A stretch of DNA of 64,000 nt from Trichoplax adhaerens (taxonomy: Eukaryota > Animalia > Placozoa), in the NCBI RefSeq assembly GCF_000150275.1, contig NW_002060955.1, positions 1,284,287 to 1,348,286 on the forward strand, given 5' to 3'. The notes under the pieces are model-generated. The model saw only the letters and a program-made list of their open reading frames with translations. It was not told where the DNA came from and ran no database searches. Positions 21,030-26,766 of this stretch are shown here, in pieces. Made by a program: the position numbers and the translations under genes. The number at the start of each line of letters is the position of its first letter. Position 1 is the first letter of the stretch.

Positions 21030-21245
21030 ACTGTACCTAGTGTACTGTACAGTACTACAGTATAGCCATGTACGTACGGACAGCCTGACGCACAGTACTG
21101 TACTGTACTGTACAGTGTACAGTATGGCTGCAAATCCTTCACGTGAATCCTTTTACACTACACTACTGTACTGTACACTGTACAGTATGGTACGGTACAG
21201 TGTACAGTATATTAACTGTGTGTACTGTACACTGTACAGTAGCGA
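21030..21245. repeat. TACAGTA/TACTGTA array immediately upstream of the selenoprotein H start
   Basis: Dense tactgtac/tacagtac runs, the same repeat type as 1345-1670. Confidence 0.85.
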
Positions 21246-21335: not shown

Positions 21336-22688
21336 ATGGCACCACGAGGGAAAAAAGGCAAAAATTCAGCCCTTCGCAAAGCAACTAATGGTGGTAGTAC
21401 TACCAAGAAACTTAAAGCCAAGAGAGCAAAAGCTCAAGCTGTGCGAAAATTTGTTATTGAAAGAAGGTACGTACGTAAAGGATGAGATCGCTGATGCGCT
21501 ATCTCTGCAATCTCGCTATGCTAGTCATGATTGAATGAAAGTCAACTGGCTGGAATATAGGCGAGTAATAGTAATGTTTATGTTAAATACCTCCAATAAC
21601 TAGCACGGCTAGATAGAAATGATAAGCAAAATTGAATTTTACACCAGTTGCAAGGAGCTAAAGCTCCGTCATTAAACTACAGTACGTACTGCACTAGCTG
21701 TGATAAATTTTAGTAAAAAGATTAGCCGACGCAATAATGAATCAGCTCACTAAATCGTAATTGTTAGTTGCCCAGGTCATTTTACTACAATGCGATAGGA
21801 TCCCAATTCTTGATCCAGGTACAATGGTTATACCTGCAACGCAGATATGCTTTTTCTCAGACTATGGTATTAGATCATACATCGGCTGCACAATGTACGT
21901 ACTGTATGATCGTATATACTAGATTTATTGACAGCTTACCATGAACTGGATTTCGTGCATGTATTTCATTGACTGTGCTGATACGAGTATTCTTATTAAC
22001 TCTAAAATTCAATTTCTACTATGAATGGACTTTGTAAGTGTTGTATCTATACTAACGTCGCCAATCTACTATCACAATAATTGAAATAGACCACTATCGC
22101 TAGCAATGAAGGCAGGCCAAATGCATATTTTGCTATCAATCTCAGCGAAATCGAGCCTGTTGATACTATACGAGTATATATGTATATGTTATATACATGT
22201 GGGTAGCAAGAGATTTTAGTACTCTTTGCTATGGCCAAAGCTTACAGCTGCTCTATCGATTTCCATTAGTATGACTTGACGTATATATAGGCGTAAAGCT
22301 GAAGAACTTACGCAAGCGTTGCAAGAAACATTTCCCAACGTAGAAGTAAGTATTAACCCTGAGAAAGCTCGGCCTGCAAGTTTCGAATGTCAAATGGTGA
22401 CTGAGGAAGGCAACGGTATGTAGAGCTGAAGTTCTTGATGTTTCGACTACAACGATTAGTTGATTTGCAGATTCTTTACTACCCAAATTAAGATCTTGTA
22501 TCAGCTATATTATGACCCTTTGTATCGAACATCGTACATCTTGTTCCTTTTACTTTTTAATTGACAAATCTAATTTTATGCTCGTGCGTATATTAGAGAT
22601 TCTGTTATGGACTGGCATTAAACGATTAAAGAAAGTCAAGTTTCCTGAACCCAAAGAAGTAATTGATGCTGCCAAAACGGCTTTGTAA
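21336..22688 (+). CDS. SELENOH: Selenoprotein H (Rdx/thioredoxin-like family), 122 aa, Sec encoded by TGA at 22277-22279
   Basis: Exons 21336-21466, 22270-22415 and 22597-22688 (GT-AG, phases 2 and 1) give MAPRGKKGKNSALRK...KFVIER-S-M-T-U-RIYRRKAEELTQALQETFPNVEVSINPEKARPASFECQMVTEEGNEILLWTGIKRLKKVKFPEPKEVIDAAKTAL. This matches SelH hallmarks: MAPRG basic N-terminus, VIExCxxU position, NPxKxR, SFE, LWTGIK, KFPEP. A SECIS lies downstream. Confidence 0.93.
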
Positions 22689-22877
22689 TCTAAGCATTGC
22701 CAATTAGTTTATTCTCAATTTTTCGAGTAAACAATAGTAATGTTAACTTTATCCGCTAGTAATTGTTATTTAAGATCTGTAATTATGATGTGTAGCCAAA
22801 CTCGATTATCAATAACTTGCCCAATTTACTGTTTTTGCATAAGCTCAAATGGCTATTCTATCGTACGGCGCGTCCAT

Positions 22878-22961
22878 TCAGCGAGTGTAGTTCCATGACA
22901 ATGATTGGTGAAACGGATTTTAGTCTGTCCATGATTTTGATACATAAACTGTGTTCACTGA
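22878..22961 (+). promoter_or_regulatory. Eukaryotic SECIS element (type II) in the SELENOH 3'UTR
   Basis: Helix I: tcag/gagtgtagtt pairs with aactgtgttc/ctga. Core ATGAC (22895) opposite TGAT (22938). AAA at 22911, 11 nt after the core. Apical mini-stem cggatt/agtctg. Confidence 0.85.
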
Positions 22962-22963
22962 GT

Positions 22964-22969
22964 AATAAA
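22964..22969 (+). terminator. Polyadenylation signal AATAAA of SELENOH
   Basis: AATAAA immediately 3' of the SECIS. Confidence 0.6.
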
Positions 22970-24339: not shown

Positions 24340-26766
24340 TTACGCATCAGAGAAGTAGAATTTTTTAGAAAGAGAACTTTCAAACAATGGTTGCTGCACA
24401 CAAGACTTGCTTTCTTTGTCAAGTACATAATTTTGTAGCCTACGGTTTACATTAGTTAGCATATCCAATAAACCGAAACTTTTATAATTCGATTCCAGTT
24501 CTCTTACGAATTCCTGAATGAACCACGATCCATTTTCTGTATCCCTTAAGGACTGAAAATCCTGTACGGTCAAGTAAGCCATTAGAAAATCACTGTAGGG
24601 GTGCCTCAAATTACCAGGTTTATCGGAATTACTGATATTATCCGTCGCATATAAAGTGTCTGAAGGATTTGGAACGGGGATACCTTCACCCTGATCGTTA
24701 CCACGGCAAGCCTACAGTAGACCCGAAAAATATAAATAATTAAATAATAGATAATTAAGATATCAAATATGATACTATATCTCGCTCTTTAGATCTGTTC
24801 AATTTCTATAGATAATTTGAAGAGAACGGTACCCTTAATTACAACATGAAGGTAAACTAGAAATTATATGTAAATCATTCACAGTAAGTACGGCATTGAA
24901 AAAATAAATAATTTCCAATTTCCACGATTACTTTCCATGCCGGTATATGTACGGGCACGTTAAATTCATCTGTCAAAAATAGATGCACCTGTGTAATAAA
25001 AATCTTTGGCTTTCCCACCAATGACGGGCATTTATGGCCGGAAAATTGATCATATACATCTTGTAGATAAATTTCACCTCTGTCTTTCGCAATTATACAA
25101 TCTACAACATCTTTTTTGTCGTTCTTGTCAGTTATAAGTTTTCTGTTACCATGGCTAAGAAAAACGCAGATAAAGCTATCGTAGTTGACGTGTGCACCAG
25201 TAGCAGAATACTCTTGGATTTTCTGTTCAATTTCTGCCTTAAGCAAAGAGTAGTTACAGTGACTAAAATTAATATATAATTCACAATGAGAAACAAAAAT
25301 ATGTGTACTTTAAATAAAGTTGAAGAAAGTTGTATTCATAATAAGCATACAAGTATCTACTTTCGCCGCTTAGATTATCTCAACATAATAATAAAATTAC
25401 TTTTATTTTTACCCACATTTCGCGACAGAGAATAAATCGATTTCAAATAATTTACTTATTTTTAATCATACATAACGTACTCACACTTGGTTAAATATCA
25501 CAGCAATTCCATGAGGTTTTTTATTCATTAAATAACAAGGCATCTTCGTCAACTTTTGAGGACTTGTTGCAGGACCGCTCAAACAATTGCCTAGAATTTT
25601 GATCAGACGAAAGTATATACTAATTTACGCAAACATGTCGGTAGGAATTAAAATAAAGAATATTACAGACACTGAAGGATAGATGAATAGATATTGATGT
25701 AACATAATTATATAAATATTCTTAATCGTATTTGTGATCACATAATTAATTTTAATTTGATAATAGATATTTATCTGATAACGGTTGCTAATATTTATAA
25801 TCATCTTCCTGTCCTTACCATCTCCTGCGTAAGATCTGTCTTCTCTTTGAGCAGTGGTAAATAAACCTGGCTTAGCCTGACGAAGGAGATAACCAAAGAT
25901 TTTAACATACTCTTCCCCTTTTTTTGAAATTTCTTCCCAAGTGTCATTTATCATTCTGTTTCAGAAATTAACGAGCTTAAACTTTCATACATATTCTAAT
26001 GTTAACTGAACGAGAAAGAGAAACTTAATTCTTGATCAATTTACGTTAATGATATCATCTAGCATATTCTCAAATTACTACAAACGATGAAGTAGTAGTT
26101 TAAGATAGGTATTATTACACCAATGGAGAGATGAACTATGAATTTCGTTTTCAATCCGACTTAAATTTCTAAAAATTTCCAAAGCATCTTATGATCCAAA
26201 GTTTCGAGCACCGATCTATAGCTATAAGTACCGTAGTAATTCTGTATCTGTAATATTGCTAGTACCAATGCTGGCTAAATTAGTAATATATGAGACATAT
26301 CTTGAATAATTATCCTGTGCATCTGTGGTCTATAAAATTACTTTTGAAGGTTAACAGAAGATACCAATAAGAATTTCTTTTAAACCTCAATATTTGTATA
26401 TCAAATAGTTAACTGAAATTAAATTCTATACAATTCTGAAGATTGAACATGCGATTCTTGTACCATCCTTTAAAAAGCAGGGGGAAGTTTATATCATCGC
26501 ACATATCACATCATATTGTATGGTAAATAAAGGCCAGTAAAATTTTTGGACCACAGTTATTCTAAGTAAAAGAAGAGAATAACATACTTGTAACGGTTGC
26601 TTTCGCCCTGAAATTGGTAATATTTAGTTTTACTTATGATCTTCTTTTGGTAAAGCTGGTGGTGAATCTGATTTAATTCTTGCTTGGTCAGACCATAGAG
26701 TGTGCGAAGATCTACTCCAAGTATCTCGCTCATTTTATCATCACTTAATCTATCTTCCCAACTCAT
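24340..26766 (-). CDS. Caspase with N-terminal CARD-like prodomain (initiator-type architecture)
   Basis: Exons 26766-26588, 25955-25819, 25590-25485, 25262 (or 25237)-24989 and 24711-24340. N-terminus fits a CARD pattern (LYQKKIISK..Y.....EEISKKGEEYVKIFGYLLRQAKPGL). Catalytic domain motifs: MNKKPHGIAVIFNQ, FLSHG, KPKIFITQ|ACRG, DFLMAY, GSWFIQ, QQP. The RxGSxxD segment is not found. Confidence 0.85.

What the first reader, a model, noticed from the sequence alone, without database searches (positions are those of the whole stretch)
21336..22961. Hidden selenoprotein H gene with UGA recoding and a non-canonical SxxU redox motif
Seen: three exons absent from the ORF track splice into a 122-aa SelH with an in-frame TGA at the Sec position, plus a SECIS and AATAAA in the 3'UTR. 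The motif reads E-R-S-M-T-U, so the partner Cys of the usual CxxU motif is Ser. Established: SelH and other Rdx proteins normally use CxxU/CxxC. Inference: this is a selenoenzyme without the adjacent Cys, which would need an external reductant or the only Cys in the predicted protein (SFEC) to resolve. The Ser codon is split AG|T across intron 1, one base from TG|T (Cys), and that A creates the consensus AG|GT donor. Standard annotation would probably truncate or miss this gene.
Basis: partly seen in the sequence, partly recalled or inferred. Interest (0 to 1): 0.85.

Follow-up and report, generated by a model that had tools for sequence, protein, structure and literature searches.

The report
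Trichoplax selenoprotein H paralogue with SxxU
This is a real three-exon selenoprotein H gene of the placozoan Trichoplax adhaerens, already catalogued in 2012 and present in databases as a mis-spliced model. Its only unusual point is that the cysteine found next to the selenocysteine in every other family member I could read is a serine here.

Summary
Exons 21336-21466, 22270-22415 and 22597-22688 (+) read as a 122-aa selenoprotein H (SelH) homologue. There is an in-frame TGA at 22277-22279, a SECIS-like hairpin at 22876-22963 and AATAAA at 22964-22969.

The gene is not new. By scaffold and strand it is Ta.SelH_b of Jiang et al. 2012 (PMC3473315). Databases hold it as TRIADDRAFT_60064 / UniRef B3S771 "Selenoprotein H". 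That 115-aa model uses an AG 21 nt downstream and so deletes S-M-T-U-R-I-Y.

The serine is real at the DNA level. Exon 1 ends ...GAA AGA AG|GT and exon 2 starts T ATG ACT TGA. The paralogue Ta.SelH_a has its intron at the same place and phase and reads TG|C ATG TCC TGA, which gives C-M-S-U. Two Trichoplax sp. H2 models show Arg (AG|G or CG|G) at this split codon, so the non-Cys state is not an error of one assembly. Every other SelH where this position is visible has Cys.

I found no paper that describes SxxU in SelH. Rfam does not detect the SECIS, but it finds only two weak SECIS matches in this whole genome.

My reading is a divergent SelH paralogue that works as a single-selenol enzyme. 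The interest is modest.

The parts
21336..21466 (+). Exon 1 coding part. It runs from the ATG through a basic N-terminus (MAPRGKKGK...) to F-V-I-E-R plus the first two bases (AG) of the split -3 codon. The donor is AG|GTACGT.
   Evidence: The public model P0004 maps at 100% to 21336-21467.
21465..21466 (+). The AG that, with T22270, forms the Ser codon at position -3 from Sec. The paralogue has TG at the same place.
   Evidence: The H1 and H2 models read Arg (AG|G) when this AG is joined to the wrong acceptor.
21467..22269 (+). Intron 1 (803 nt), phase 2, inside the -3 codon. The position is conserved in the paralogue and in unrelated SelH genes.
   Evidence: One search shows L018, L028 and L033 with yAG|Y NNN NNN TGA.
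22270..22415 (+). Exon 2. It encodes (S)-M-T-U-R-I-Y-R-R-K... through N-P-E-K-A-R-P-A-S-F-E-C... The donor is G|GTATGT.
   Evidence: Pfam Rdx gives E=8.7e-4. The paralogue matches at E=3.9e-10. Gorilla SelH aligns across the stop.
22277..22279 (+). In-frame TGA at the family's selenocysteine position.
   Evidence: The same column is TGA in L011-L015, L020, L027 and L030.
22289..22290 (+). Downstream AG, inside the Arg codon AGG. The public gene models use it as the acceptor, which removes 21 nt including the TGA.
   Evidence: The P0004 HSP starts at 22289/22291.
22416..22596 (+). Intron 2 (181 nt), phase 1.
22597..22688 (+). Exon 3 coding part. It encodes (E)-I-L-L-W-T-G-I-K-R-L-K-K-V-K-F-P-E-P... 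and ends in TAA at 22686-22688.
22876..22963 (+). Candidate form-2 SECIS. Helix I pairs 22876-22892 with 22947-22963. ATGA is at 22895-22898, the unpaired AAA at 22911-22913, a mini-stem at 22913-22928 and TGAT at 22938-22941.
   Evidence: Its layout matches the Rfam SECIS_1 consensus spacing shown. Rfam itself gives no hit.
22964..22969 (+). AATAAA polyadenylation signal, directly after the SECIS stem.

Best explanation
The locus is Ta.SelH_b, one of two selenoprotein H genes of Trichoplax adhaerens. It encodes a 122-aa, probably nuclear, Rdx-fold protein.

Shown:
- The reading frame crosses a UGA at the family's Sec position.
- A SECIS-like hairpin lies 188 nt after the stop codon, just before the poly(A) signal.
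- The residue three positions before Sec, Cys in every other SelH examined, is encoded as Ser. The cause is A instead of T as the first base of a codon split by a conserved phase-2 intron.

Inferred:
- The UGA is decoded as Sec.
- The protein cannot form the intramolecular Cys-Sec selenenylsulfide of the CxxU redox box. It therefore cycles as a single-selenol enzyme: Sec is oxidised or forms a mixed Se-S bond with a substrate, and an external thiol such as glutathione or thioredoxin regenerates it.
- This resembles glutathione peroxidases, 1-Cys or T/SxxU peroxiredoxins and monothiol glutaredoxins.
- The Ser hydroxyl may help to stabilise the selenolate.

The gene is the more divergent paralogue. 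It has also lost the family-invariant GPP of GPPRKLKFP and has ARPASFE where the family has PRRGSFE.
For: - Gene structure and Ser codon: read directly, with exon pieces translated.
- Independent support for all three exons and two of the four splice sites: the public 115-aa model maps at 100%.
- Family membership: Pfam Rdx on exon 2, precomputed PF10262 on the model, and vertebrate and environmental SelH proteins recovered by profile search.
- Coding constraint on the 21 nt that the public model skips: the window has S-M-T-U-R-I-Y, the old paralogue has C-M-S-U-R-V-Y and mammals have C-T-S-(U)-R-V-Y. The paralogue shows synonymous differences and no intron similarity.
- Same intron position and phase in the paralogue (TG|C) and in three unrelated SelH loci.
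- Ser is not an assembly error: the identical model exists in H1 and H2, and a 90%-identical H2 protein also reads Arg at the mis-joined split codon, which needs AG or CG and not TG.
- Cys at -3 everywhere else.
- SECIS: its 16-bp helix I is the longest among 2,889 NTGA..AA..GA pattern instances on both strands of the window. Its crude score is 24, against 14-17 for the two Rfam-supported Trichoplax SECIS elements. Its spacing is identical to the SECIS_1 consensus.
- The gene is listed as a selenoprotein with matching scaffold and strand.
- The TXXU motif in Sec-peroxiredoxins is a known redox motif.
Against:
- Rfam SECIS_1 gives no hit on the 3' UTR.
- Helix II of the candidate SECIS has only 5 Watson-Crick pairs in 10. 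The middle is U.U, G.A, A.G, U.U.
- The hairpin region as a whole does not fold better than shuffled sequence (z = +1.07).
- The extra losses of invariant motifs are also what relaxed selection would produce.
- The single-selenol mechanism is pure inference. No activity is known even for canonical SelH substrates.
Confidence: 0.72

Rival explanations
1. The duplicate is decaying. After duplication of SelH, this copy lost the resolving Cys and other invariant motifs under relaxed selection. It has little or no redox function, whether or not Sec is still inserted.
For: Three family-invariant features are changed together: Cys at -3, PRRGSFE and GPPRK. The H2 relative differs at 11 of 115 residues. 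A canonical CxxU paralogue exists that could cover the ancestral function. Helix II of the SECIS is weak.
Against: The frame is intact over three exons and the splice sites are good. The in-frame TGA and its flanks (M-x-U-R-I/V-Y) are kept, although the paralogues are only about 46-48% identical. A SECIS-like element with a 16-bp stem sits in the right place. The H1/H2 differences are denser in the basic N-terminus (6 of 43) than in the domain (5 of 72). A dying selenoprotein gene would be expected to lose the UGA or the SECIS early.
Confidence: 0.14
2. The annotated 115-aa isoform is the real or main product. Splicing to the AG at 22289-22290 bypasses the UGA and yields a selenium-independent protein without any redox motif.
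For: Both public annotations (H1 and H2) predict this junction, and it is in frame.
Against: Gene predictors avoid in-frame stops, so the models are not evidence. The same artefact appears in the paralogue model and in fish and bird models, where W comes from TG|G. The upstream AG comes first and has the better pyrimidine tract: about 71% against 48% pyrimidines in the preceding 21 nt. The 21 skipped bases are conserved as coding sequence between old paralogues. A SECIS would be pointless for this isoform.
Confidence: 0.08
3. The serine is a sequencing error or a private polymorphism of the sequenced strain, and the species normally has CxxU.
For: It is a single-base difference (A for T at 21465). 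No reads could be inspected.
Against: The H1 and H2 assemblies give identical models, and a divergent H2 copy also requires AG or CG at the exon end.
Confidence: 0.03

Closest known systems
Ta.SelH_a (TRIADDRAFT_56553, UniRef B3RYG8), the second SelH gene of the same genome (L002, minus strand)
   Same: It has three exons. The intron lies at the same position and phase inside the -3 codon. The TGA is followed by C. It shares F-[VI]-I-E-R before the motif, R-[VI]-Y after it, the S-F-E-C cysteine and a basic N-terminus.
   Different: It has the canonical C-M-S-U motif (TG|C) and keeps PRRGSFE and GPPRKLKFP. The proteins are only about 46-48% identical. I could not securely identify its SECIS. 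The best guess has a UUGA core 247 nt after the stop.
Vertebrate selenoprotein H (SELENOH), a nucleolar Rdx-fold protein with a CXXU redox box
   Same: The N-terminus MAPRG(R/K)K is shared. Sec is at the same position and is followed by R-V/I-Y. The motifs NPxK...SFE, LWTGIK and KFPEP are shared, and the size is similar at about 120 aa. The CXXU box of SELENOH is described in PMC13088273.
   Different: Vertebrates have C-T-S-U and the window gene has S-M-T-U. Vertebrates have Val where Trichoplax has the S-F-E-C cysteine. The window protein lacks GPP.
Sec-containing peroxiredoxins (TXXU). From my own knowledge: iodothyronine deiodinases (S-C-T-U) and glutathione peroxidases
   Same: They are thioredoxin-fold selenoenzymes in which a hydroxyl residue, not Cys, stands three positions before Sec. 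Sec acts alone as the nucleophile, and another thiol resolves the oxidised selenium (TXXU: PMC1088965; the deiodinase cycle is discussed in PMC9141512).
   Different: They belong to other families of the fold, with a different substrate pocket. No homology beyond the fold was tested. For SelH_b no substrate and no peroxidase activity are known.
Fep15, the fish paralogue of Sep15 (from my own knowledge, not checked here)
   Same: It is a lineage-restricted duplicate of a thioredoxin-like selenoprotein that kept Sec but lost the neighbouring Cys of the redox motif.
   Different: It belongs to a different family (Sep15/SelM), resides in the ER and occurs in a different lineage.

Membership tests
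Selenoprotein H (homology family within Pfam Rdx, PF10262) | Sequence homology of the Rdx domain to SelH proteins | tested here: met
   Exon 2 alone scores Rdx E=8.7e-4, 19.9 bits, just under the 22.6-bit cut-off for a fragment. PF10262 is precomputed on the 115-aa model. The profile search recovers named SelH proteins of vertebrates and molluscs. Gorilla SelH aligns to exons 2 and 3.
Selenoprotein H (homology family within Pfam Rdx, PF10262) | In-frame UGA at the family's Sec column | tested here: met
   TGA 22277-22279 aligns with TGA in 8 contiguous environmental SelH loci and with the U position of vertebrate SelH.
Selenoprotein H (homology family within Pfam Rdx, PF10262) | SECIS element in the 3' UTR | tested here: inconclusive
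   A hairpin at 22876-22963 has ATGA / AAA / TGAT in consensus spacing and a 16-bp helix I. There is no Rfam hit, and half of helix II is non-Watson-Crick. The Rfam blank is uninformative: the model finds only 2 sub-threshold hits in a genome with 28 listed selenoprotein genes. SECISearch3 is not available here.
Selenoprotein H (homology family within Pfam Rdx, PF10262) | SelH signature motifs NPxKPRRGSFE and GPPRKLKFP(D/E)P | tested here: inconclusive
   The motifs are partly kept. The window protein has NPEKARPASFE and KR--LKKVKFPEP. GPP and the RRG are otherwise (nearly) invariant in 14 aligned sequences.
Selenoprotein H (homology family within Pfam Rdx, PF10262) | Conserved phase-2 intron inside the codon three positions before Sec | tested here: met
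   The window has AG|T and the paralogue TG|C. L018, L028 and L033 have AG|C or AG|T acceptors directly before NNN NNN TGA.
Selenoprotein H (homology family within Pfam Rdx, PF10262) | Transcription, correct splicing and Sec insertion | not testable with these tools
CxxU 'redox box' selenoproteins (functional class: SelH, SelW, SelT, SelV, SelM) | Cys three residues before Sec, able to form an intramolecular selenenylsulfide | tested here: not met
   The codon is AG|T, which is Ser. Cys stands there in all other SelH sequences examined. The protein is a SelH homologue but not a CxxU protein.
T/SxxU single-selenol thioredoxin-fold enzymes (Sec-peroxiredoxin-like chemistry) | A hydroxyl residue at -3 of Sec in the loop between strand 1 and helix 1 | tested here: met
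   The S-M-T-U motif follows directly on the strand F-V-I-E-R. TXXU is described as a redox motif in PMC1088965.
T/SxxU single-selenol thioredoxin-fold enzymes (Sec-peroxiredoxin-like chemistry) | Peroxidase or related activity with an external or distal resolving thiol | not testable with these tools
   This needs biochemistry.

The most novel reading that the evidence does not exclude
SelH_b is a naturally occurring Rdx-family selenoprotein whose active site has switched from the dithiol-like CxxU box to a peroxiredoxin/deiodinase-like SxxU site. It would be a nuclear single-selenol enzyme with chemistry different from canonical SelH. It is kept alongside a CxxU paralogue, so one animal carries both versions for direct comparison.
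Probability: 0.3. Interest if true: 0.55.

Novelty: new variant of a known kind. Interest (0 to 1): 0.33.

Why it matters
The biochemical function of selenoprotein H is still poorly defined, and so is the role of the Cys in its CxxU box. Trichoplax carries a CxxU copy and an SxxU copy side by side. That gives a ready-made comparison of what the partner Cys contributes. It also gives a possible example of a thioredoxin-fold selenoprotein moving toward single-selenol chemistry.

There is a practical point too. The public models of both Trichoplax SelH genes, and of several vertebrate SelH genes, splice around the UGA and need correcting. In addition, a naive read-through of the conserved acceptor (yAG|Y) produces a false 'Ser' at this very position in other species. 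Claims of SxxU in SelH must therefore be checked against the true exon 1 end, as was done here.

Tried and rejected
- Rfam on the locus and on the 3' UTR alone gave no SECIS. I judge this uninformative after the whole-genome control and after the two known SECIS elements scored only 32.5 and 27.7 bits.
- The miRNA-like Rfam hits at 21088-21209 are palindromic GTAC repeats, not miRNAs.
The DNA of the H2 copies, and hence their -3 codon and SECIS, could not be fetched.
- The search for homologous proteins with exon 1 found nothing. With the 115-aa model it found only its own cluster.
- The 45-aa exon-2 search of 1.84 billion representatives gave only the two Trichoplax clusters and P0002. P0002 is a repetitive 826-aa protein that I regard as a chance or low-complexity match.
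- Alignment A2 was too diverse for the search for related loci. A3 worked.
- A family tree of the domain (17 rows, 77 columns) was unresolved. I therefore make no claim that the duplication is placozoan-specific.
- The paralogue's SECIS gave no convincing canonical element within 6 kb downstream.
- The alternative donors at +4 and +8, and the alternative upstream acceptor, were checked by eye. All run into stops or lose the conserved residues.
- The spliced (joined) protein or mRNA was not built, searched or folded. The exons were searched separately by reference. For that reason no structure with the SxxU loop was predicted, and the distance from Sec to the S-F-E-C cysteine was not measured.

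Full report
WHAT IS THERE

The window is AT-rich eukaryotic DNA. Earlier scan notes name the genome as Trichoplax adhaerens. I confirmed this independently: the protein encoded here is identical, exon by exon, to TRIADDRAFT_60064 of T. adhaerens.

Reading directly gives this structure:
- The ATG is at 21336. Exon 1 ends ...TTT GTT ATT GAA AGA AG at 21466 and is followed by the strong donor GTACGT.
- Intron 1 ends ttccattAG at 22269. Exon 2 begins T ATG ACT TGA CGT ATA TAT AGG and ends AAC G at 22415, before GTATGT.
- Intron 2 ends tattAG at 22596. Exon 3 runs to TAA at 22686-22688.
- The three coding parts sum to 369 nt, which is 122 codons plus the stop.
The split codon AG|T is Ser, then come M, T and TGA.
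- The only cysteine is in S-F-E-C.

The joined spliced sequence was not built or submitted to any tool. The exons were handled separately by reference.

IS IT SELENOPROTEIN H?

Yes, by homology.
- Exon 2 alone hits Pfam Rdx (E=8.7e-4).
- A profile of the Trichoplax proteins recovers named SelH proteins from mammals, birds, frogs, fish and molluscs.
- Gorilla SelH aligns to exon 2 across the stop codon, and to exon 3.
- The N-terminus MAPRGKKGK matches the vertebrate MAPRGRKRK.
- In eight contiguous environmental SelH loci the same column is TGA.

IS IT HIDDEN?

No.
- Jiang, Ni and Liu 2012 (PMC3473315) list two SelH genes in Trichoplax: Ta.SelH_a on (-)scaffold_5 and Ta.SelH_b on (+)scaffold_13.
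- The window lies on contig C1402, plus strand. The only paralogue in the genome lies on C1410, minus strand.
- The contigs appear to be numbered in reverse order of size: C1414 is 13.26 Mb and C1410 is 8.57 Mb, while C1403 (1.94 Mb) and the window's contig C1402 (about 1.92 Mb) are far smaller. On that numbering C1410 is scaffold_5 and C1402 is scaffold_13, and both strands agree. The window gene is therefore Ta.SelH_b.
- Databases hold it as EDV21433.1 / XP_002116033.1 / UniRef B3S771 'Selenoprotein H'. An identical protein is RDD37868.1 in Trichoplax sp. H2.
- That 115-aa model maps at 100% to 21336-21466, 22291-22415 and 22597-22685. It joins exon 1 to an AG at 22289-22290, inside the Arg codon AGG. 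That deletes exactly S-M-T-U-R-I-Y.
- Standard annotation therefore neither missed nor truncated the gene. It spliced around the UGA.
- The same artefact is visible in the paralogue's model and in fish and bird SelH models, which show W (TG|G) at this point.

IS THE SERINE REAL?

At the DNA level it is.
- The paralogue (L002, minus strand) has the same three-exon structure, with its first intron at the same position and phase. Its exon 1 ends ...ATT GAA AGA TG|GTAAGG and its exon 2 starts ttattAG|C ATG TCC TGA CGC GTA TAT. That gives F-I-I-E-R-C-M-S-U-R-V-Y. The window gene gives F-V-I-E-R-S-M-T-U-R-I-Y.
- Other donors (+4, +8) or acceptors give stops or remove conserved residues.
- Three unrelated genomic SelH loci from metagenomes have an acceptor directly before Y NNN NNN TGA, so this intron position is ancient.
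- This also sets a trap. Reading through such an acceptor (yAG|Y) yields a false 'Ser' (L018, L028, L033). In the window the Ser does not come from that artefact. It comes from the AG at the end of exon 1, which follows the conserved F-V-I-E-R.
- An assembly error is unlikely. The H1 and H2 assemblies give the same model. A second H2 protein (RDD36509.1, 90% identical, on a 35.6-kb contig) also reads Arg at the mis-joined split codon, which requires AG or CG, not TG.

HOW UNUSUAL IS IT?

The -3 residue is Cys in every other sequence where it is visible:
- at least nine mammalian entries, where the U is dropped in UniRef;
- three JGI proteins that print Sec as W;
- 8 of 8 contiguous metagenome loci;
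- the Trichoplax paralogue.

A full-text search found no paper with both 'selenoprotein H' and 'SxxU'. The 2012 paper's main text does not mention SxxU and does not discuss the CxxU redox motif of SelH.

The window protein also departs from two other nearly invariant motifs. It has ARPASFE for PRRGSFE and KR--LKKVKFP for KGPPRKLKFP. It is the divergent copy.

A domain tree was unresolved, so I cannot date the duplication.

SECIS

Rfam finds nothing. This blank carries little weight. SECIS_1 finds only two sub-threshold matches in the whole genome, although 28 selenoprotein genes are listed.

The candidate at 22876-22963 has these features:
- a 16-bp helix I, the longest among 2,889 NTGA..AA..GA pattern instances on both strands of the window;
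- ATGA at 22895-22898;
- one unpaired base followed by ten helix II positions;
- G-AAA at 22910-22913;
- a 6-bp mini-stem with a 4-nt loop;
- ten return positions, then TGAT at 22938-22941.

This is the exact spacing of the Rfam consensus, as seen on the two Trichoplax controls. On my crude pair count it scores 24, against 14-17 for those controls.

Its weaknesses are real. Helix II has only five Watson-Crick pairs, and the middle four positions are U.U, G.A, A.G, U.U. The region as a whole is no more stable than shuffled sequence.

AATAAA follows directly at 22964-22969. I rate the SECIS as probable, not proven.

MECHANISM

Shown: a Sec-position UGA, a probable SECIS, Ser at -3, and a single Cys elsewhere in the protein.

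Inferred:
- Without the partner Cys, the protein cannot close the intramolecular selenenylsulfide of the CxxU box (described for SELENOH in PMC13088273).
- The selenol must act alone and be regenerated by an external thiol. TXXU Sec-peroxiredoxins work this way (PMC1088965). From my own knowledge, so do glutathione peroxidases, and deiodinases have a hydroxyl residue at -3.
I consider this less likely. That Cys is shared with the CxxU paralogue and with other invertebrate SelH proteins, and the column alternates C/V/I. This is the pattern of a buried strand residue, not of a newly recruited catalytic one. It was not tested structurally.

RIVALS
- Relaxed selection in a redundant duplicate remains possible (three invariant features lost). 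Against it stand the intact frame, the conserved UGA flanks between copies only about 46-48% identical, and the SECIS-like element.
- The UGA-bypassing isoform of the public model cannot be excluded without reads. It rests only on gene predictors, uses the second and weaker AG, and would make the conserved 21 nt and the SECIS pointless.

WHAT COULD NOT BE DONE
- Hence there is no RNA evidence and no DNA of the H2 or other placozoan orthologues.

VERDICT

This is a real, already catalogued selenoprotein H gene with a mis-spliced public model. The SxxU motif is genuine at the genome level and, as far as I could search, undescribed. It is unique among the SelH sequences I examined. It is a modest new variant of a known kind, and its function is untested.

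Noticed in passing
window 21038-21214 and 1416-1536: Clusters of palindromic GTAC-based repeats (TGTACAGTACAGTA and variants) lie directly upstream of the SelH start, with a second cluster near 1.4-1.5 kb. There are 31 matches with up to 2 mismatches, against 0.73 expected. Rfam scores them as weak miRNA-like hairpins. They may be a promoter-proximal repeat or a mobile-element remnant.
   Followed up: partly
L002 (G000:C1410:4235059-4238190, minus strand): The public model of the paralogue Ta.SelH_a (TRIADDRAFT_56553, B3RYG8, 122 aa) also splices around its UGA and omits M-S-U-R-V-Y-Q-R-K-S. The true protein would be about 132 aa with C-M-S-U.
   Followed up: partly
L002 minus strand, about 247 nt after the stop (locus about 1019-972): The best SECIS candidate of the paralogue has a non-canonical UUGA core, a good 9-of-10 helix II and an AA bulge plus mini-stem. 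No canonical ATGA-type SECIS was found within 6 kb downstream.
   Followed up: partly
protein P0001 (RDD36509.1, Trichoplax sp. H2, 35.6-kb contig): H2 carries two SelH_b-type proteins. One is identical to the H1 model and one is only 90% identical. The second could be a divergent haplotype or an extra copy. The H1 assembly has only one.
   Followed up: no
L018:583, L028:75, L033:190: The phase-2 intron inside the codon three positions before Sec is conserved in unrelated SelH genes. Reading through the acceptor (AG|C or AG|T) gives a spurious Ser. Mis-spliced vertebrate models show Trp (TG|G) at the same point.
   Followed up: yes
whole genome G000; L009, L010: Rfam SECIS_1 finds only two sub-threshold matches (32.5 and 27.7 bits) in a genome with 28 published selenoprotein genes. 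An Rfam blank is therefore not evidence against a placozoan SECIS.
   Followed up: yes
window 24340-25246 (-): ORF fragments of a caspase-like gene (…FLSHGN…) lie downstream on the opposite strand. This is the subject of another first-stage note (s1-801487).
   Followed up: no
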